From Macrostomum lignano (taxonomy: Eukaryota), in NCBI GenBank assembly GCA_002269645.1, contig NIVC01000945.1, positions 337,792 to 401,791 on the forward strand: DNA of 64,000 bases. The letters run 5' to 3'. Below, one piece after another: positions 9,890 to 33,280 of this stretch. Position 1 is the first letter of the stretch. Every line of letters begins with the position of its first letter. The notes under the pieces were generated by a model, which saw nothing but the letters and a program-made list of their open reading frames with translations, made no database searches and had not been told where the DNA came from. The translations under genes were made by a program, and so were the position numbers.

Positions 9890-12800
9890 CAGCAAATGCT
9901 CTGATCCTAATAAAACATCCACTAATCATCTCCAAAAACGTTTTCCTTTGATTCAAATGTGTTACCTTTTCTATTAAACGAGTCTAACCCTGAAATCTGT
10001 ATTAGAATTTGAAGCAATAAATATATTTATATGTATTAAAAGTTATGTATTTTATGTTTACACACAGATTAAGTAAAAAAAGACACTTAAACTCATTTAA
10101 ACGTAAGCTAGTCACGAGTACTCTACTCAAAAAGTAGTCATTGAAGCATTTATTTATGCGTGTTAAAATTTGAAACAAAAACCTGTTTACTCGGCGTAAA
10201 AATTTATAACTTTGCCTTTTATCGCATCAGGAAATTATGAGGAACCTGTAGCACGTTTCTGAACTGTTGCTCAAAAAAACTATAACTGAAAATCTCAACA
10301 AAACAAACAAAAATTATTCAGAATACTAGAATAACAAAATCAAAATTGATTTGAGAAAAACACTGAGAACCAGAAATGGAGTGTAATTGTCTAAGAAGGT
10401 GCTAATTTTCTAATAGAATTTGAGATTAAAGTGTGTGACGGGCATAATAAAATATCTAGGATTGCGCAAATTGATAAATATGCAGATTGCAAACGTGCGT
10501 TTCAATACTTTTTTATTAAATCGTGTTTTAAGTTGACTTGCAACTTATTTACAGAGCACAGCGAACCAGTTGAGATGATGAGCCATAGGCAAAAACAAAT
10601 TAAGCGTGCTATAATACTAAATAACTAAGTTTTAAGCGCGCTACTCATCTAAGTAGCCTGAGTAGACAAAATGATACCAAAAAACTCGAATAAAAGTTAG
10701 TTTAGAATCATTAATACACGCGCAACAACTATTCACAGAGCAAATCACAGCCTTCTTTGATGATGCCTTAGTTTAGACAAGTTTGATAGCAGAGTTACAA
10801 AAAAGAGCACAAAAAGCAACCATTACAGGGTGAGTTTGAGTAAAAATGAGGCGATTTTCGGTGAGATATTAATGACTCGCCCTAGTGAACAAATGGAAGA
10901 AATGTACAAGTTCGGAAATGCTTCACAGCATCGTCAGTGTATAGATTGGCAGGTAATAGTGCATTAGGCCAAGCTAACAGAGTCGATCGCTAAATTTCCA
11001 TGTGTGAAATTGTTTCTTTAATTGTTGCACAGACTTGTCAATCAATCATGTACTACTAATATGCGCTGGCGAAACTGTACTGTAAAACTAAGATGAAATC
11101 GATGAAACAGATGAGTAAGAATGAGGAAAGAATGGTTAAATAACCTTAACTACGGAACAACTTCTTTACAAAAGTGACATTATAAAAAAGATAGGGAAAC
11201 TAATTAAGCATAAAAAATCAGATCTGTCAAAGCAGCAAAAATATGTACAGTTTAAGGCAGCAGAAGGGTGAAATAAAAGCCAGTGTCACAAAACAGTTCT
11301 AAAACTATATAAGCATTATAGAAAGTTGCGCTGCTAATTGTGAAAAACATGTTATATACATTTTGCCTAATATACATTCGTGATAGTACATGTCAATTGC
11401 ACCTTGTTGATATGAGCATTGTTATTAATCTATAGTCATAGCATACAAAGGGTGCAAATCCATAATAAGCAGTACAAATACCAGTAGCTATACGGTAGTT
11501 ACAGTCAGTGGAAGACCTTGTGACGTTTGTTGCCGCATGTGAGAAAAACAACAAGCAAAAAAACTGTACATGGCATTCATAAAGTTACTAATTAAAACAA
11601 AGTTCTCTGTATACTATATCGACGAACTAAGCTGTCAAACACAATAGCGCTTATTGATGAATAATGATAGTAGATACCTTAAATACAATACGAAATACTG
11701 AGACAGACAACAAAATCCTGGAATGATGCTGAGTAGAAATGTCAAGTACTACGTAGAAATATTTAACCTATAATTCAATATTTTCATAGATATTCATTAG
11801 TATTATATTCTATTATTTAAATATTCACTTCTTAGCTTTGCCAAACTTCCAGTTGAAGTTTTGCGATATGGTATGGTATTATAGTTAATAAAAAACTTAG
11901 CCACTAAAACAATTACATATTCACAGTCCATACTCACTACTCCGCGGCTGAAGTCAGCTCTGCGTTCATTCTAACCTCTTTCTTTTCTTCTATCTTCTTC
12001 TAGATCAGATTCGCAGATGGGTCTGCCCATACCAGACGCTAATAGGTGTCACCAGGTTCCTGTTTAGATGCTGCATTGCCGATTGGAAGTTTGCCAGCGA
12101 ACAAAACGGAAGCTATTGGTTTCGTTGCAGCTATATTTATAGCAGTTTGCACCCAGCTGCACACTGTAAACAGATTATAAACACAATTCTATATAAAGCA
12201 ATCATAATTAAAACTGAAAATTTCAAGCATATATAGTTTGCTTCCAAAGCTTACCACTTTTGTAGAGATTAAATCTCTGATAGAAGCTGTGCAGGTAGGA
12301 AGCAGCAGCTTACCCGCGGCCTCTCCTAGCCAAGCCAAGAGCCAAGGCCGATGCAGCGCCTCGAGTTCTCCAGACCTTAACCTATTTGCTTTAAATAGCG
12401 AGACAGAATCGCCTGAAATTGGGGGGGGGGGGGGGTGGTGGGTTGAGATCGGGCTGCGAGGGGTGGAGGGGCGGGGGCGGCACCTTCCGCGGGGCCTCCG
12501 CCCAAGCCCAGCCAAACCGAACCAAAGCCTCCCCCCCAACCCACCACCCCATTGCCCCAGGCGAGTCCAGCAGCACCGCACCCCAGTGCGCAGCTGCAGG
12601 ACTGCAGGATAGGCTAGGTAAGTGATTAAAACCTAAACGCAAACAAGCACAGCACAGCAGGCGCAAAGGTGAAGAGAGAAAGATAGACAGAGAGAGAGAG
12701 ATGGAATCGATTTTCTCTGCTCGATAGCTCACCGCCCACAGCGCACGCTAAGAAGTGAGCCATGCAGCCAGTCAGCCGCCAATTTACCTTCCTTACCTGT

Positions 12801-25791: not shown

Positions 25792-28700
25792 CTAACGAGA
25801 CTCCAGTCTCGACGGTGAATTAGATCGCGACCGTTCGATCGAGCGCAAATCTCGTTCGAATTTGCGTCCAAACCTTGATCTAGACCTAGACCTAGACATC
25901 GACCTGGACACCGATCGCTTATAAGACTGAGAACCGTCCACAGATGGCGAAGTGGACGGACTCACACGAATAATTGGCTCAATGTGTCGTCTCCTCATGG
26001 GTACGAACTCGCGTCTACGAGAACGCGACCGCTCAATTTGCGGTCGGCGATGCGCCTGCTCAGATGATCTGTATTGGTCTCGGGGATGCCTGCCGGCATT
26101 GCCAAACGAAGACCGATGCTGATGATAGCTTCTATACGAACGGCCGCGATAGTCTCGACTACTTTGAAATCGGCGTCGAACATCTCTTCGGTGCTGCATT
26201 TCAGCTGGCGCTGTTTTAGATTTGTTTTGGATGTTGCAGTTTAATTGCAGGCATTTGGACACGACCTTGGAGTATGCTTTCTATATTAAAAAGTCACCTG
26301 TTTTTATTAGCATGTAAAGCTTGTAGATAGGTTTTGCCGTGGGCGCAACTACGAATACATTCAATGAAGAGTCTGTAAATACCTTTGTTCAAGGGCCCCG
26401 GTGCGTGAGAAACTACGACATAACACCTTTAAAGGGTACTACAATGGGAGCACTAGTAATGTATATACATTCCTTCCTGCAGGCAGCTGAATACTCTCCC
26501 TTGAGGGGAACAGCAGTATACAACTGTACGTAAGATGGGAATGGGAGTAAGTATGGGAAACACAGGCTTCAAGTTTACACGAAACTGTTACAGTGTCAGT
26601 TTAGAATAATCCAATTAGCTTTAAAACTAAATCTAGAGCAGTATAGTTGATCTAAATCCCGTTTTGCTATTCCAAAAATATTGGGACTCTTCCCAAGTGG
26701 GTCGCCATCATAAGCTCGAAAAATCACATTGTCAAAAAGTTTAGCAACCACCATCACAAACTCGAAAAGTCATATCGTCGAAAACTGATTTAGCATCTCT
26801 AGCTCTAACCCTAACCCCAAGGCACCAACTCTAACTCTAACCTAACCATGAACCCTAAGGCACTAACTTAGCTTGTGATGGAGGATGCTAAATCAGTTCT
26901 CGACGATGTGAGTTTTCGAGCTTGTGATTTTTTCTAGCTTGTGATGGTGGTTGCTAAACTTTTCGACGATGTGATTTTTTGAGCTTGTGGATGGCCCCCT
27001 TCTAAGCCATAGCAAATCTATCAAAAACAAAAAGACCCTTTATATAAATACTAAAAGCGTAATGTTTTAAAAAATATGAAAGTAAAAAATTCAGATATAA
27101 TCGAATCGCTTACATTGTTTAGCATTCAAGAAGAACCCTTCATGATTACGAATGCACATGGCAAACTGCACGACTGAATACGACTGCAAATTTCTGTATA
27201 GCACGCACTATGCACTGCATTTTAAACTCTGCATGTCACCTTCGGAAACTGATGAGAAAATTGCTGAACTGTAACCATGAAGTTTCTCATTTTCTGAGTC
27301 AAGCATTATAAAAATGCACCAGTTCCCTTATCAGAAAGAGAAAGCATGCAGTATCAACTCATAATTCATAAGACAATCCAATGCTTTCTGTGACTGCGAA
27401 ATCCATGCGCTTAAGAAGGATGCAATTCATGGAGCTGATTTACCGCTGATCAAACTGACTGCGCTGTAATTTTATTCAGTGATAAAACACTGCGGCACTG
27501 AACGACATGTTTGGATTGCTGGAAAATAAGTTGAAACAGCTTAAACCTTTTTGCTTGTGTGCAGTCAACAGTGATGTTAACAGTAAAATATTACATACAA
27601 CTTCGCGTGATGAATCCAAAATTCAAAAAGACGGAATCAGTAAGTCATAAAACTTGACAGACTCACTTTTTCTGGGTCCTTCGGCGATCTCCACTGTGAC
27701 ATTGTGGCCTAACAGGATCGATCCGTTGGTGTGATCTCTAGCAGTTGCGGCATCGTCGGGGTGAAGAAATGTGCAGACAGACAGCCAAAAAGCACAAATA
27801 AGATGACAGCAGATTGATTGAGTGGCCATAATTGATGCGTTTTAAGGCTCAATGGTTAAGGAAACTAAATTCAATAGAAAACAAGGCAAGAAAAATTTCA
27901 ATCATATAGCAGTCTGGCTATTCCTATAGTGGTCCGATGTGTCAAGAAATTTGAAATGATGACAGACAGATGATTTGAAATTAAAAATGCTTAACCTTGT
28001 AATAGGGGAAATAATGGTTCAAGTCAGGCGCGTCGCCACCGGGGAGGGGACATGTCCACCAGTAAAAGCTATGGGGAGGACATGCCAATGCTTCGTCCCC
28101 CCCCCACCCAACCTTTATGAGTCGTGGTAATCAATAGTTTTTCTTCAGGGCGCCAAAATATAGTGCCTGCGGCGCCAAAATGAGTGCCTGCGGCGCCAAA
28201 ATGAGTGCCTGCGGCGCCAAAATGAGTGCCTGCGGCGCCAAAATGAGTGCCTGCGGCTCTAAAATGAGTGCCTGCGGCGTCAAAATGAGTGCCTGCGGCT
28301 CTAAAATGAGTGCCTGCGGCGCCAAAATGAGTGCCTGCGGCTCTAAAATGAGTGCCTGCGGCGCCAAAATGAGTGCCTGTGGCGCCAAAATGAGTGCCTG
28401 CGGCTCTAAAATGAGTGCCTGCGGCGCCAAAATGAGTGCCTGCGGCTCTAAAATGAGTGCCTGCGGCTCTAAAATGAGTGCCTGCGGCGCCAAAATGAGT
28501 GGCTGCGGCGCTAAAAGGAATGGCTGCGGCGCTAAGATGAGTACCCGCGGCGTTAAGATGAATTCTAACAACACGATTCTTAAAATAATGGAAATGTAGG
28601 AATTTAGCCATGTACATGTACATGTTGAATTCTTGGCTTTGTCCCCCCATAAAATCCATGGCGACGCCCCTGGTTCAAGTTAAATACAAGAACCTGGAAG

Positions 28701-30479
28701 CATGACTGACACTGCCAGACTAAAAGAATCAGGGGGATGAATGCCAACTCATTCAGTAATAAAAATGTGGTTTTGCATTATTTGTAACAATTATCAAATG
28801 GTGTATCAAATAAAATTTTAACAAAAGGATATTCAATGAATGCATAGCCCTTGAATTGCTGAGTCAGTCGATCTGCTGGTATATTTACTGAAAGAATGTC
28901 TCCAAATTGTTCATAGTAGAGTTGTAGCTCTTCCACACTAAAATGCAAGTAAAGTTGTTATGAGGTAACTTTAGTAAAAAGGTACAAAAAGATTAGATTG
29001 AATAGCTTCTATGTTAAATTTTTTACTTTAGAATAATAAATAAAATTAAATATTCAAGTATTTTAAATATAAAAAAGTTGAGTTATAGCATTTTCAAATA
29101 AAAATACAAGCTTAAATATTTTGGTTTAGAGGTGCAGAATTAACAAATTTTATTTTCATATTCATGGCATAGCAACATATCTTGCATCACACAAATAGAG
29201 ATATAATTTGATTGGCTGTAACTTTTATATACTAGCAGACAATGGGGTGAAACTTTAGATATAGCTAGTGTGAGGTACATATTATGACTAGGCAAGTTTT
29301 ATCATTGTTGAATGGAGAACAAGGGCAGATCTAAAGGAGGGGCCAAGGGGGCCATGGCCCCTTTAGCTGTGGCCAAAAAATGGGCTATACTATTTTGGTT
29401 TGCGACTATGCCAGTCCTATTTTCCAATAGTGCTTAGTAAAGCTTGCTTACTCTCAAAATTTTTTTCAATCCATGCCTAGTGGAAAACTGCTTAAATATA
29501 CTAGATTTGATGCAAATAAAATTTTTATAATAGCAATAGAAAGTATCATTTCATAAAAAAACATTGTATCTAGATATGCTTTCACCTATCAATGATAAAA
29601 ACTAGCCAAATCACAATAGGCAGCTCATATTAGCCATATATTTGAAAGTTTAATAAGTTTAAGCTTTTATTATCTAGAATCTTTGGCTCTTATCCCAAAA
29701 TATGAGTTAAAAGAGAATGGTTTTTAGGAACTAAAATATCTTTCTTTAACTGTTAATAAATATAATACTTTGAGTTTAAACATTTTATACATTAATGCAA
29801 TATCATATTCTATCAACTTTTACTTAATCAGTGTATATTATTTAATAAAAATATTTTAAAGAAAAAATGGTATGCAATATTAATAGGGGCAAAAATATTA
29901 TTTCATTATTTTATATTAAAAGACAAAGCTTTGATAATTTATAAATAATAGGCCTAGCTTTTATTGAAATAATCAATAATAATATAAGAAATAATAGATT
30001 AGCAACCAAAGCAAAATCAAAAGTAAAAACATACTAGGATTTATATTTTGATAGGCCTAATAATATGGAACACATCAGTGATATAACTAGGATTTTCCAT
30101 TGTGGGATGACACATGTTTAGTCTAGGTCAAGGGCCAATAAAAGATAGAACAAAAGTGGTACTCAGCCTAGTAGCTACTGTATCATAGACCTTTATTATC
30201 CTTCTAAGCAATTAGGAAGAACAACCTCCCTATCCATATCATTGCATAGCCTAATATCTAGGTTTAAACTATAAAATAACCTATATAAATAAGTAACTAA
30301 AATTGCATTAAGAAAAAAAAATATTAAGCTTGCTAAGTGACCAAAAGAATCAATATTTATAAGTTAATTAGGTTAAAAAAGTATAATATATCAGATATGA
30401 CTTTGAAAACTTACGTGGCATCATGAGCAATTGGCTTTATAAAGATAGTAGCTTTGTCATATCCTTGGGGGCAAGACAT
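25792..30479 (-). CDS. SRSF10: SRSF10/SRSF12-like SR splicing factor (RRM + RS domain), 230 aa, 4 coding exons
   Basis: Exons (minus) 30479-30415 (65 bp, MSCPQGYDKATIFIKPIAHDAT), 28937-28833 (105 bp, VEELQLYYEQFGDILSVNIPADRLTQQFKGYAFIE), 27770-27667 (104 bp, FLHPDDAATARDHTNGSILLGHNVTVEIAEGPRK) and 26210-25792 (TPAEM..RSRSRS..stop). Total 693 nt, in frame. RNP1-like KGYAFIEF and the SRSF10-type RKTP motif are present. Confidence 0.9.
26698..27000. mobile_element. Palindromic MITE-like element with a central (CTAACC)-like tract, in SRSF10 intron 3
   Basis: Arms gccatc..aagctcgaaaaatcacat..tttagcaaccaccatcac and their reverse complement flank ctaaccctaacc..ctaacctaacc. Confidence 0.7.
27771..28832 (-). 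other. U12-type (minor) AT-AC intron, intron 2 of the SRSF10-like gene
   Basis: 5' end ATATCCTTTT at 28832-28823 (U12 donor consensus). 3' end ...CTGCAC at 27771. Perfect U12 branch site TTTCCTTAAC at 27864-27855. Phase-2 junction GA|A TTT inside the RNP1 motif. Confidence 0.92.
28025..28672. mobile_element. hAT-type MITE carrying a 21-bp minisatellite, inside the U12 intron
   Basis: TIRs CAGGCGCGTCGCCA / TGGCGACGCCCCTG. 8-bp TSD GTTCAAGT at 28017-28024 and 28673-28680. Interior array GAGTGCCTGCGGCGCCAAAAT, about 19 copies (about 28160-28560). Confidence 0.92.
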
Positions 30480-31539: not shown

Positions 31540-33280
31540 TGTCCGCAAAAAGGGATCCAGTCAGTTGAGCCGTTTCTCGGCCTGATCGAATTCTTCAGTC
31601 GTTTTATTCCGGGACTCGTGGAAAGGAGCGAGCAACAAGCCTTTCCAACAGTCCGAGACCGCATTGCATGCATGCAACACTACGCTGATATTCTTTGATT
31701 TGCGCTGCCAAACCGAACTCATCGTTGACGCCAGCCCTACAACGCTACAAGACTCGGTGCCAATTCTCTGCCAGGTGGTCCAACCGACCGCGGAGCGTCC
31801 TGGCCGGTTGCATCGCAAGTAGATCTTTGTCTGCACTCCAGTCTAATACTCGCAGACAGTGAGAGGCTTTTAGCAATCAAGTACGGACGTCAGAAGTTTC
31901 GGCACTACCTCAGCGGTGTAGCAAACTTCACAATCGTGACCGATCAAGCCTCTGACCTTCATGTTTTAGCCCAGCTCGCGCCCATTTCCACGCATCTAAC
32001 GCATTGCACTCAGCACCCAGGACTTGCAGTTCAACGTCGTCGATCGACCAGGCCCATTCAACCTAAGGGCATTCTCAGTCGGCAGCCCGAACCCATTCCA
32101 AAAATGGTCAACCTCGGCTAGATGTAAAACACCAACTACAGCATCGTCCAACGACACTAAGAGGACTGTACAGTATCTGCTGCAAGTAGAAGCAAGCAAG
32201 CAAGGAGGCAACGGCCTCCTTTCATCGGCAATGTCCTCATTGCGTACCGGCAGTTCGGATCTGCGGAACGGAAACATCGGCAAAAGGACGCGGCTCAACA
32301 GAAGCTTCAGGAGTTCTTTTAACAAGACTAGCGACGTGTGATCTCCGAAGCTCCACAGTCGACCGTTCTTTAGTTGCATGTAGCTCACAAGAAGTCATCA
32401 AGGCGAGACAAAAACTTTTCTGCGACTCAACTTAAACTCTAGTGGCCAGGAATATCAGCTGAGGCTAAACGAATGATGGCGAAGAGTCTATGTAGAGTGC
32501 GCCGCCGCGAATCATCAAGCTGAAGCCCCAGCGGCCTCACTACAACAAACCGAACTGCCGGAGTTATCGTGGTCCATCATAGTAGAATAATTGAATTTCT
32601 CGGTCACATCAACGGACGACAACTTTTAGTGATTGTGGACCACCATTTGCACTATCCGATCGGAGTCCACCATCGCAGAGTGCATCAATCGGCAATGGAA
32701 GCAAATGTTTGGAATTTCCAAGCAGATCGTGACTAACAACGGCCCACCATTCTCGTCGGAAGCATTCACCGGTTTTATTAAGAGTCTTAATTGTGAGACC
32801 AGCCACCGTCGAATCCCGCCGTACCATTTTGAGGCCAATGGCACCATATGGAGCGCATCAACAGGCCCCTGAATTAACAAGTTTCTACGCATCTCCAGCA
32901 CCCAAGGCACCGACTGGTGGATTTCACTATAGAAAGTGGCTCGCCGCGTATCGCAACGGGAGCCACGGAAGCGTTGCCGGCCGACCTGATGTTTGAGAGG
33001 CCAGTTCAGGACTGCATTCTGAGCACAACCAAGGGGATCCCAGTGTTGGCGGCCAAGAGGCGAGACAACGACTACAAGGCCGCGATGAAAATTCACGGTG
33101 CGAAAAAATGGTAAGAAAGCATCGCATCCAAACCGGGGACAAGGTTTTGAGGAGGCGAGTCAAGCTCTCTAAGACGGACACCCCCTTCGAAATCGATCCC
33201 TGGACGGTCTACGAGATCAAAGGGGATTCTGTCGTCTAAAAGTTCGATTGGGGGAGGGAAGAAGTTATACACGGCCATCC
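31540..33280 (+). mobile_element. Degenerate Ty3/Gypsy LTR-retrotransposon pol remnant (RT end, RNase H, integrase)
   Basis: Frameshifted motifs FLGLIEFFSRFIPG (RT end), LIVDAS and LAIKYGRQKFRHYL..FTIVTD (RNase H), IVTNNGPPFSSEAF..PYHFEANG (integrase). LTRs were not identified. Confidence 0.8.

What the first reader, a model, noticed from the sequence alone, without database searches (positions are those of the whole stretch)
27709..27870. Two competing AC acceptors: candidate minor-spliceosome-controlled unproductive-splicing switch
The sense strand reads ..TTTCCTTAAC-CATTGAGCCTTAAAAC|GCATC..(68 nt)..CATCTTATTTGTGC..CTGCAC|ATTTCTT. The perfect U12 branch point lies 16 nt from an upstream AC (27840-27839), the canonical spacing. 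Using it adds 68 nt, shifts the frame and stops at TAG 27711-27709, removing half the RRM and the entire RS domain. The AC that restores the RRM (27772-27771) has only a weak CATCTTAT branch-like motif about 28 nt upstream. The strong site therefore appears unproductive and the weak site productive. Vertebrate SRSF10 is known to autoregulate through its minor intron via a separate poison exon; this would be a differently built invertebrate version using a tandem alternative U12 3' splice site. The stop is only 42 nt from the next junction, so a truncated protein rather than NMD is possible.
Basis: partly seen in the sequence, partly recalled or inferred. Interest (0 to 1): 0.88.

Follow-up and report, generated by a model that had tools for sequence, protein, structure and literature searches.

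The report
Flatworm SRSF10-like U12 intron, distant branch site
The two AC acceptors are really there, at the end of a conserved minor-spliceosome intron in a Macrostomum lignano SRSF10-like gene, but a branch site far from the used acceptor was seen in every other minor intron checked in this genome, so it is weak evidence for a splicing switch.

Summary
The window is Macrostomum lignano (G000:C945). The minus strand carries an SRSF10-like gene whose RRM is split by an AT-AC U12 intron (28832-27771). This intron sits at the same position and phase as the minor intron of a fish SRSF10.

- donor ATATCCTTT
- branch site TTTCCTTAAC
- proximal AC 17 nt after the branch A
- distal AC 85 nt after it
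- 68-nt frameshift and TAG at 27711-27709

All three annotated homeologous proteins use the distal AC. No protein on record carries the proximal junction.

The premise that canonical spacing makes the proximal AC the strong site fails here. In 10 other M. lignano U12 introns (two SRSF10-like paralogue groups, Cav channel, PLC-beta, NAA20, four zDHHC, a helicase-like gene), a consensus or near-consensus branch site lies 23-64 nt from the protein-preserving acceptor. Purine-preceded ACs in between are bypassed, including one at exactly 17 nt in the Cav channel gene. The proximal AC and the 68-nt spacing are not conserved in the paralogues.

The switch is unsupported but not excluded without RNA-seq.

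Unexplained: a 223-nt nearly invariant intronic block ends at a second, in-frame AC (27823-27822), and substitutions in the 68 nt look codon-like.

The parts
30415..30479 (-). Exon 1 coding part (MSCPQGYDKATIFIKPIAHDAT), donor GTAAGT
   Evidence: Matches the N-terminus of the annotated M. lignano proteins P0001 and P0002.
28833..28937 (-). Exon 2 (VEELQLYYEQFGDILSVNIPADRLTQQFKGYAFIE), the first part of the RRM up to RNP1
27771..28832 (-). AT-AC U12-type intron (1062 nt) as used in the annotated proteins. Same position and phase (codon split after nt 2) as the fish SRSF10 minor intron.
28824..28832 (-). U12 5' splice site ATATCCTTT
   Evidence: Only match in the window.
28149..28552 (.). 21-bp tandem array (19 copies) inside the intron, flanked by a 14-nt inverted repeat (28025-28038 / 28659-28672). 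Probably an inserted repeat element; present in all three homeologs with variable copy number.
27822..28044 (-). 223-nt intronic block with one variable column among the three homeologs (about 5% divergence elsewhere). Contains the branch site and both bypassed ACs, and ends exactly at CCAC|.
27865..27895 (-). Pyrimidine tract plus AG (TTTTTCTTGCCTTGTTTTCTATTGAATTTAG|) directly abutting the U12 branch site. Looks like a U2-type or trans-splice acceptor; untested.
   Evidence: Lies within the invariant block.
27855..27864 (-). Consensus U12 branch site TTTCCTTAAC (branch A 27856)
   Evidence: Complementary to the GUAAGGAAA stretch of the M. lignano U12 snRNA.
27839..27840 (-). Proximal AC (AAAAC|G), 17 nt after the branch A. 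Its use gives +68 nt, a frameshift and a stop.
27822..27823 (-). Second bypassed AC (GCCAC|T), 34 nt after the branch A. In frame (+51 nt, 17 aa); the first YAC after the branch site.
27771..27838 (-). The 68-nt segment between the two ACs. It has 5 substitutions among the homeologs: 4 synonymous third-position changes and 1 non-synonymous change in the exon-3 frame. The frame is open, with an ATG at 27829-27827.
27771..27772 (-). Distal, productive AC (CTGCAC|A), 85 nt after the branch A. TGCAC| is the commonest AT-AC 3' splice site among the M. lignano U12 introns examined.
27667..27770 (-). Exon 3 (FLHPDDAATARDHTNGSILLGHNVTVEIAEGPRK), the rest of the RRM; donor GTGAGT
27709..27711 (-). TAG reached if the proximal AC is used
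25792..26210 (-). RS-rich last coding exon (TPAEMQHRRD...SNSPSRLESR*), 97% identical to P0001
12140..12422 (-). Alternative 3' exons used by the window's own annotated model P0002 (PAA74483). Exon 3 is joined here and the RS exon is skipped.

Best explanation
Positions 27709-27870 cover the 3' end of the ancestral SRSF10-type AT-AC minor (U12) intron in a divergent SRSF10-like gene of Macrostomum lignano. This gene is one of three homeologs and one of at least three paralogue groups. The U11/U12 signals are textbook. The acceptor that gives the functional RRM, and that all annotated models use, lies 85 nt downstream of the branch site. This is the extreme of a genome-wide habit, not a gene-specific device. 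In M. lignano the minor spliceosome appears to pick a YAC (typically TGCAC|) or AG tens of nucleotides after the branch site, passing over purine-preceded ACs on the way. The proximal AAAAC| is therefore most likely a bypassed dinucleotide, or at most a low-level cryptic site, rather than the dominant acceptor of an unproductive-splicing switch.

Shown: the sequence anatomy, the annotated junction, the intron homology, and the long distances in 10 other introns.
Inferred: that the consensus motif is the branch actually used, and that the bypassed ACs are rarely used.
For: - Organism and annotated proteins.
- In-silico splicing.
- A fish SRSF10 has the intron at the same codon and phase, with its branch site 11 nt from the 3' end.
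- M. lignano has a standard U12 snRNA (88.7 bits, 3 copies, GAGTAAGGAAAA present).
- Paralogue group B: KGYAFVE|ATATCCTTTTT...TTCCTTAAC...64 nt...TTTAC|GTTCGAC. Group C: 52 nt from the near-consensus TCTTTAAC.
- Unbiased pattern searches for donor plus perfect branch site gave the NAA20, helicase-like, four zDHHC, Cav and PLC-beta introns. Their distances are 42, 23, 25/31/31/59, 30 and 37 nt.
- The Cav, PLC-beta and NAA20 junctions align without gaps to solved structures.
- The Cav intron bypasses an AC (CGAAC) at 17 nt. 16 of 17 bypassed sites have R at -3. The used AT-AC sites are TGCAC x6, TTTAC, TTCAC and CTCAC.
- No protein with the proximal junction is on record.
Against: - No RNA-seq or lariat data could be consulted, so use of the proximal AC is untested.
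- In other animals an AC 10-17 nt after such a branch site is normally the acceptor. Human GMFB even uses AAAAC| 11 nt after TTCTTTAAC (PMC7244321, methods).
- The branch site to proximal AC stretch is perfectly conserved among the three homeologs.
- The 'first YAC' rule inferred from the other introns predicts CCAC| at 27822 here, not the annotated distal AC, so the rule is incomplete.
- The 3' splice sites of the zDHHC and helicase-like introns rest on frame and length only.
- The sample is 11 introns, four of them paralogous zDHHC genes.
Confidence: 0.6

Rival explanations
1. The consensus branch site drives splicing mainly to the proximal AC (27839), giving a frameshifted 99-aa product or a decay target. 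A weak, distant or cryptic branch supports the productive distal AC. The ratio is set by minor-spliceosome activity and/or by the SRSF10-like protein itself.
For: - Anatomy and frameshift are confirmed.
- 17 nt is near the canonical window used in other species (PMC1557818: 10-20 nt assumed; 8-30 nt accepted).
- The region is invariant among the homeologs.
- Vertebrate Srsf10 is autoregulated through this very intron (PMC7244321).
Against: - Long branch-to-acceptor distances are universal in the 11 M. lignano U12 introns examined, and a 17-nt AC is bypassed in a Cav channel gene.
- AAAAC has a purine at -3, like 16 of 17 bypassed sites.
- The layout is not conserved in paralogue groups B and C.
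- The CATCTTAT motif is not conserved.
- All annotated proteins use the distal AC, and no protein has the alternative junction.
- An AC at this distance is expected by chance about half the time.
Confidence: 0.12
2. The relevant alternative is the in-frame CCAC| acceptor at 27822 (+51 nt, 17 aa after RNP1), or an internal start at ATG 27829. Either would make part of the '68-nt segment' coding in the exon-3 frame in some transcripts.
For: - CCAC| is the first YAC after the branch site, at 34 nt, inside the 23-64 nt range seen elsewhere.
- The frame is open from 27841.
- 4 of the 5 substitutions in the segment are synonymous third-position changes in that frame, the same pattern as exon 3.
- The 223-nt invariant block ends exactly at this AC.
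Against: - There are only 5 substitutions (P about 0.02-0.05).
- The inserted peptide (QSICCHLICAFWLSVCT) is hydrophobic and Cys-rich, and would remove the last aromatic residue of RNP1.
- Annotated proteins lack it.
- Groups B and C show no comparable open extension in common.
Confidence: 0.15
3. The invariant block marks a major/minor competition, as in vertebrates. The pyrimidine tract plus AG at 27865 would be a U2-type (or spliced-leader) acceptor overlapping the U12 branch site. Its use (for example from the GT at 28822, 10 nt downstream of the minor donor) would give a transcript that stops at TAA 27858-27856.
For: - A strong-looking polyY-AG directly abuts the branch site, which is unusual for U12 introns.
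- It lies in the most conserved stretch of the locus.
- Vertebrate Srsf10 uses competing major and minor sites in the same intron (PMC7244321).
Against: - There is no transcript evidence.
- The candidate GT donors are weak (GTTAAA).
- Groups B and C have no equivalent polyY-AG.
- One gene-conversion tract could also explain the block, because the window copy is the single outlier among the three homeologs.
- No structure signal (z = -0.04) and no Rfam match.
Confidence: 0.1

Closest known systems
Vertebrate Srsf10 autoregulated minor intron (Meinke et al. 2020, eLife 9:e56075; PMC7244321)
   Same: - Same gene family.
- An AT-AC U12 intron splits the RRM at the same codon and phase (fish locus L018).
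- Productive mRNA requires the minor spliceosome.
- A truncated, non-NMD short product is conceivable in both.
   Different: - In vertebrates the competition is between an upstream minor and a downstream major 5' splice site in exon 2, coupled to a poison exon 3 with its own poly(A) site and a GA-rich enhancer. None of these was found here.
- The fish branch site is 11 nt from the 3' end; here it is 85 nt.
- No autoregulation is shown for the flatworm gene.
Canonical U12-type (AT-AC) introns with a constrained branch-site to 3' splice-site distance (10-20 nt assumed; PMC1557818; distance-dependent 3'ss choice, from my own knowledge of Dietrich et al. 2001)
   Same: Consensus /ATATCCTTT donor, TTCCTTAAC branch site, terminal AC, no requirement for AG, and a standard U12 snRNA in the genome.
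   Different: The acceptor used is 85 nt from the branch site, and 23-64 nt in 10 other M. lignano U12 introns. That is outside the windows (8-30/38 nt) that classifiers use. Intervening ACs are skipped.
Unproductive splicing of SR-protein genes with highly conserved intronic elements (Lareau et al. 2007, cited in PMC7244321)
   Same: An SR-type gene, an in-silico PTC isoform, and an unusually conserved intronic block next to the alternative sites.
   Different: Conservation here is only among 5%-diverged homeologs of one genome and could be gene conversion. No poison exon or alternative junction is documented.
3' splice-site choice after a distant branch point in U2-type introns (AG scanning; structure-mediated shortening in yeast; own knowledge)
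   Same: An acceptor far from the branch, with nearer candidate dinucleotides skipped.
   Different: A different spliceosome. Folding of the spacer is no better than shuffles (z = 0.16), and the homeolog substitutions give no compensatory support.

Membership tests
U12-type (minor-spliceosome) AT-AC intron | 5' splice site /ATATCCTT | tested here: met
   ATATCCTTT at 28832-28824. It directly follows the RNP1 codons and is the only match in the window.
U12-type (minor-spliceosome) AT-AC intron | Branch site TCCTTRAY complementary to U12 snRNA | tested here: met
   TTTCCTTAAC at 27864-27855. The M. lignano U12 snRNA carries GAGTAAGGAAAA.
U12-type (minor-spliceosome) AT-AC intron | Branch site about 10-20 nt (at most about 30) from the 3' splice site that is used | tested here: not met
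   85 nt to the annotated acceptor. The feature is met only for the unannotated proximal AC (17 nt). It also fails in all 10 other M. lignano U12 introns examined (23-64 nt), so in this genome it does not discriminate.
U12-type (minor-spliceosome) AT-AC intron | Terminal YAC / AC | tested here: met
   TGCAC| at 27771.
U12-type (minor-spliceosome) AT-AC intron | Removal depends on U11/U12/U4atac/U6atac | not testable with these tools
   Needs RNPC3/SNRNP48 or snRNA knockdown with RT-PCR.
SRSF10/SRSF12 orthology group | Single N-terminal RRM followed by an RS-rich domain | tested here: met
   Pfam RRM_1, E = 1.2e-11. The C-terminal exon is rich in R/S.
SRSF10/SRSF12 orthology group | Minor intron splitting RNP1 (..AY(V/I)Q|FE..) in phase 2, and the G(D)RKTPxQM linker after the RRM | tested here: met
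   Same position and phase as fish SRSF10. The alignment to an SRSF10-type protein runs through AEGPRKTPAEM / AEGDRKTPGQM.
SRSF10/SRSF12 orthology group | Closer to SRSF10 than to other SR families by sequence | tested here: inconclusive
   BLASTP E = 1e-12 to both an SRSF10-type and an SRSF2 protein. The best outside hits are plant SCL30/33. The protein is divergent (RNP2 IFIKPI).
Regulated unproductive splicing (autoregulatory alternative splice-site switch) | Both junctions are actually produced | tested here: inconclusive
   Only the distal junction appears in annotated proteins. No protein with the proximal junction exists among 5.8 billion clusters. Short or unproductive ORFs are seldom annotated, and no RNA-seq is available here.
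Regulated unproductive splicing (autoregulatory alternative splice-site switch) | The alternative site introduces a premature stop | tested here: met
   In silico: +68 nt, TAG 27711-27709.
Regulated unproductive splicing (autoregulatory alternative splice-site switch) | The alternative site and its spacing are conserved in paralogues or related species | tested here: not met
   Kept in the three 95-98% identical homeologs, which is uninformative. Group B has no AC/AG 8-29 nt after the branch A. Group C has a different set of sites. Other species could not be reached.
Regulated unproductive splicing (autoregulatory alternative splice-site switch) | The ratio responds to the protein itself or to minor-spliceosome activity | not testable with these tools
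   Needs RNAi or overexpression experiments.

The most novel reading that the evidence does not exclude
Macrostomum lignano's minor spliceosome has lost the tight branch-site to 3' splice-site distance rule and chooses acceptors by motif (TGCAC-like YAC) 23-85 nt downstream. In the SRSF10-like genes, which have the longest spacers (52-85 nt), this freedom would be exploited. The nearly invariant 223-nt block and the three candidate acceptors of the window gene (17 nt frameshifting, 34 nt in-frame, 85 nt productive) would then form a regulated choice that couples SRSF10-like output to minor-spliceosome activity. That would be a differently built counterpart of the vertebrate Srsf10 circuit.
Probability: 0.1. 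Interest if true: 0.75.

Novelty: new variant of a known kind. Interest (0 to 1): 0.35.

Why it matters
The gene and its minor intron are ordinary: they are the flatworm counterpart of the known SRSF10 minor intron. The new point is the geometry. In every M. lignano U12 intron I could reconstruct, a consensus or near-consensus branch site sits 23-85 nt from the acceptor, well outside the roughly 10-20 nt taken as a hallmark of U12 introns.

If this holds genome-wide, three things follow:
- Intron classifiers that search only the last 30-55 nt for a branch site will undercount or misclassify flatworm minor introns.
- This transgenic, RNAi-amenable flatworm would be a natural system for asking how the minor spliceosome finds its 3' splice site.
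- Distance-based arguments for alternative U12 acceptors, like the one in this finding, cannot be transferred from vertebrates to this lineage.

A genuine SRSF10-like switch would show that coupling SR-protein dosage to the minor spliceosome is ancient, but the present evidence does not support it.

Tried and rejected
- RNA structure bringing the distal AC close to the branch site or hiding the proximal AC. The minimum-energy fold does pair the proximal AC region, but it is no better than shuffles (z = 0.16). The homeolog substitutions are in loops or break a pair.
- A structured RNA or snoRNA in the invariant block. No Rfam match at 27600-28900; fold z = -0.04.
- Deep conservation of the block. 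No similarity to the introns of paralogue groups B or C beyond the donor and branch site.
- A micro-exon or second intron removing the 68 nt. Its borders would be GC...AC with no alternative register, so I rejected this on sequence.
- Transcript evidence through the assemblies index. P0001 and P0002 are not on record; records of this genome appear to be withheld. P0021 gave only spliced transcripts of another organism.
- Orthologues in other flatworms. A search with the group B protein returned only one M. lignano model, P0025. That model skips YAFVEFDRTS and is probably a GT-AG-forced prediction. No second species could be compared apart from a fish.
- Homeolog divergence profiles for groups B and C. 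The copies are too similar (about 1%) to be informative.
- Finding exon 1 by similarity to human SRSF10 failed. The annotated protein solved this.
- Literature searches found no description of flatworm U12 intron geometry.
Full report
**What is in the sequence**

The window is Macrostomum lignano, contig C945 of a 764-Mb, 5269-contig assembly. The minus strand carries a four-exon coding gene:
- Exon 1, 30479-30415 (MSCPQGYDKATIFIKPIAHDAT).
- Exon 2, 28937-28833 (...KGYAFIE).
- Exon 3, 27770-27667 (FLHPDD...EGPRK).
- An RS-rich last exon, 26210-25792.

The product has one RRM (Pfam RRM_1, E = 1.2e-11). It is 97% identical to the annotated proteins PAA64597 and PAA60986 of the two other homeologs (C1737, C2081). 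The window's own model, PAA74483, shares exons 1-3.

The intron between exons 2 and 3 starts ATATCCTTTT and contains TTTCCTTAAC at 27864-27855. An AC lies at 27840-27839, 17 nt after the branch A. The intron ends CTGCAC| at 27771, 85 nt after the branch A.

Joining exon 2 to 27838 adds 68 nt, shifts the frame and stops at TAG 27711-27709. The spacing is 17 rather than 16 nt.

**What the gene and intron are**

A fish SRSF10 gene (L018) has its AT-type U12 intron at the same codon and phase...FAYIQ|FEDV, codon split after nt 2. Its branch site CCCTTAAC lies 11 nt from the intron end.

The flatworm protein aligns to an SRSF10-type protein through AEGPRKTPAEM / AEGDRKTPGQM. Overall similarity does not separate SRSF10 from SRSF2. 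I call the gene SRSF10-like. The intron is the counterpart of the SRSF10 minor intron, whose autoregulation in vertebrates is described in PMC7244321.

M. lignano has three copies of a standard U12 snRNA with the usual branch-site-binding sequence.

The three homeologs keep the branch site, both ACs and the 68-nt spacing. They are only about 5% diverged, so this says little. The weak CATCTTAT motif proposed as the branch for the distal AC reads CATCTCAT in the other two copies.

The genome holds at least two more SRSF10-like paralogue groups with the same AT-AC intron:
- Group B (C268, C3688, C362): ...KGYAFVE|ATATCCTTTTT, a perfect TTCCTTAAC, and the RRM-restoring TTTAC|GTTCGAC 64 nt after the branch A.
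- Group C (C1380, C1679): TCTTTAAC lies 52 nt before TTCAC|T.

Group B has no AC or AG 8-29 nt after the branch A. Group C has an AC at 9 nt and an AG at 13 nt.

A distant branch site is therefore a family trait. The tandem-AC/68-nt design is not.

**Is the distant branch site special to this family?**

I searched the whole genome for a U12 donor followed within 25-177 nt by a perfect TTCCTTAAC. This pattern is blind to where the 3' splice site lies (4, 19 and 6 matches against 5, 3 and 5 for the reversed-pattern control). The matches fall into families of 3-4 homeologous copies.

In eight introns the downstream exon could be placed by frame and homology. The distances below run from the branch A to the protein-preserving 3' splice site:

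| Intron | Type | Distance (nt) |
|---|---|---|
| NAA20 | GT-AG | 42 |
| PLC-beta | GT-AG | 37 |
| Cav2-type calcium channel | AT-AC | 30 |
| Helicase-like gene | AT-AC | 23 |
| zDHHC paralogue | AT-AC | 25 |
| zDHHC paralogue | AT-AC | 31 |
| zDHHC paralogue | AT-AC | 31 (16 or 22 also in frame) |
| zDHHC paralogue | AT-AC | 59 |

The Cav, PLC-beta and NAA20 junction peptides align without gaps to solved structures.

With the three SRSF10-like groups, that makes 11 of 11 introns with spacing of 23 nt or more. The one possible exception is the zDHHC intron that also has in-frame ACs at 16 and 22 nt. The literature assumes 10-20 nt (PMC1557818), and the fish comparator has 11 nt.

The Cav intron bypasses an out-of-frame AC (CGAAC) exactly 17 nt after the branch A. 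Across all 11 introns:
- 16 of the 17 bypassed AC/AG sites have a purine at -3, as does the window's AAAAC.
- The nine used AT-AC sites are all YAC: TGCAC six times, plus TTTAC, TTCAC and CTCAC.

The argument 'canonical spacing, therefore strong site' does not carry over to this genome.

**Direct evidence on usage**

All three annotated proteins use the distal AC. Because the junction is AT-AC, these models most likely rest on transcripts rather than ab initio prediction. That is my inference. By contrast, the WormBase-type model of group B (P0025) dodges the AT-AC intron by deleting ten residues.

A search of the 5.8-billion-cluster protein collection with the 99-aa proximal-junction product found only P0002, matching through the shared N-terminus. 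This is weak negative evidence.

**What remains unexplained**

- Among the homeologs, the most conserved stretch of the 3.3-kb locus is intronic. Positions 28044-27822 have one variable column in 223, against about 5% elsewhere in the introns.
- This block holds a pyrimidine tract plus AG that abuts the branch site (27895-27865), the branch site itself, the proximal AC, and a second AC (GCCAC|, 27823-27822). It ends exactly at that second AC.
- That second AC is the first YAC after the branch site (34 nt) and is in frame (+51 nt).
- Downstream of it, four of the five substitutions in the '68-nt segment' are synonymous third-position changes in the exon-3 frame. Exon 3 itself shows the same pattern. 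The frame is open back to 27841 and has an ATG at 27829.
- The numbers are small (P about 0.02-0.05). A single gene-conversion tract could explain the block, because the window copy is the lone outlier.
- The block has no fold signal, no Rfam match and no counterpart in groups B or C.

These points keep alive the idea that something alternative happens at this 3' end.

**Verdict**

- The element is the 3' end of the SRSF10-type minor intron, with an unusually distant branch site.
- That geometry is a property of M. lignano U12 introns generally. As far as my literature searches show, it has not been described for flatworms.
- The proposed unproductive-splicing switch is not supported by paralogue comparison, annotation or genome context. 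It is not excluded; I give it about 0.12.
- Counting three junctions in existing RNA-seq would settle it.

Noticed in passing
G000 loci L008/L016 (SRSF10-like groups B and C), L025-L028 (NAA20), L029, L035-L037 (zDHHC), L031 (helicase-like), L048 (Cav), L050 (PLC-beta): In all 11 M. lignano U12 introns examined, a consensus or near-consensus branch site lies 23-85 nt from the protein-preserving 3' splice site. The recurrent AT-AC acceptor is TGCAC|, and purine-preceded ACs in between are bypassed. The usual 10-20 nt rule does not seem to hold in this genome.
   Followed up: partly
window 27822-28044 (minus strand): A 223-nt intronic block has one variable column among the three homeologs, against about 5% elsewhere. 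It is the most conserved stretch of the locus, more so than the exons, and it ends exactly at the CCAC| dinucleotide. Either selection or one gene-conversion tract could explain it. No structure, Rfam or paralogue signal was found.
   Followed up: partly
window 27771-27841 (minus strand): The exon-3 reading frame stays open through the 68-nt segment, with an in-frame ATG at 27829-27827. 4 of its 5 homeolog substitutions are synonymous third-position changes. The in-frame acceptor CCAC| at 27822 would add 17 aa.
   Followed up: partly
window 27865-27895 (minus strand): A strong-looking pyrimidine tract plus AG (TTTTTCTTGCCTTGTTTTCTATTGAATTTAG|) directly abuts the U12 branch site. It could be a U2-type or spliced-leader acceptor competing with U12 binding.
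   Followed up: no
window 12140-12422 (minus strand): The window's own annotated protein (PAA74483, Mlig015740g2) joins exon 3 to exons about 15 kb downstream and skips the intact RS exon at 26210-25792. This is either an alternative 3' end or a chimeric model.
   Followed up: partly
window 28025-28672: The U12 intron contains a 21-bp tandem array (19 copies, 28149-28552) flanked by a 14-nt inverted repeat. It looks like an inserted repeat element shared by all three homeologs, with variable copy number. Group C's intron also carries long short-period repeats.
   Followed up: partly
window 31729-32872 (plus strand): Fragments of a retroelement pol gene lie upstream of the gene (RT_RNaseH E = 8.7e-5; integrase core E = 4e-4). 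Both are below the Pfam cut-offs and the frames are broken. Observation only.
   Followed up: partly
P0025 (UniRef A0A1I8JAK0) versus L008 2340-2420: The public model of the group B paralogue lacks YAFVEFDRTS (half of RNP1). The gene predictor apparently forced GT-AG borders around the AT-AC intron. Minor introns are probably mis-annotated in that gene set.
   Followed up: partly
L018 3063-3755 (fish SRSF10, GCA_014905685.2): With the donor placed at |ATATCCTTT, the annotated protein junction makes this fish SRSF10 minor intron end in AT (..CTCAGCAT|G) rather than AC. Its branch site is 11 nt upstream.
   Followed up: no
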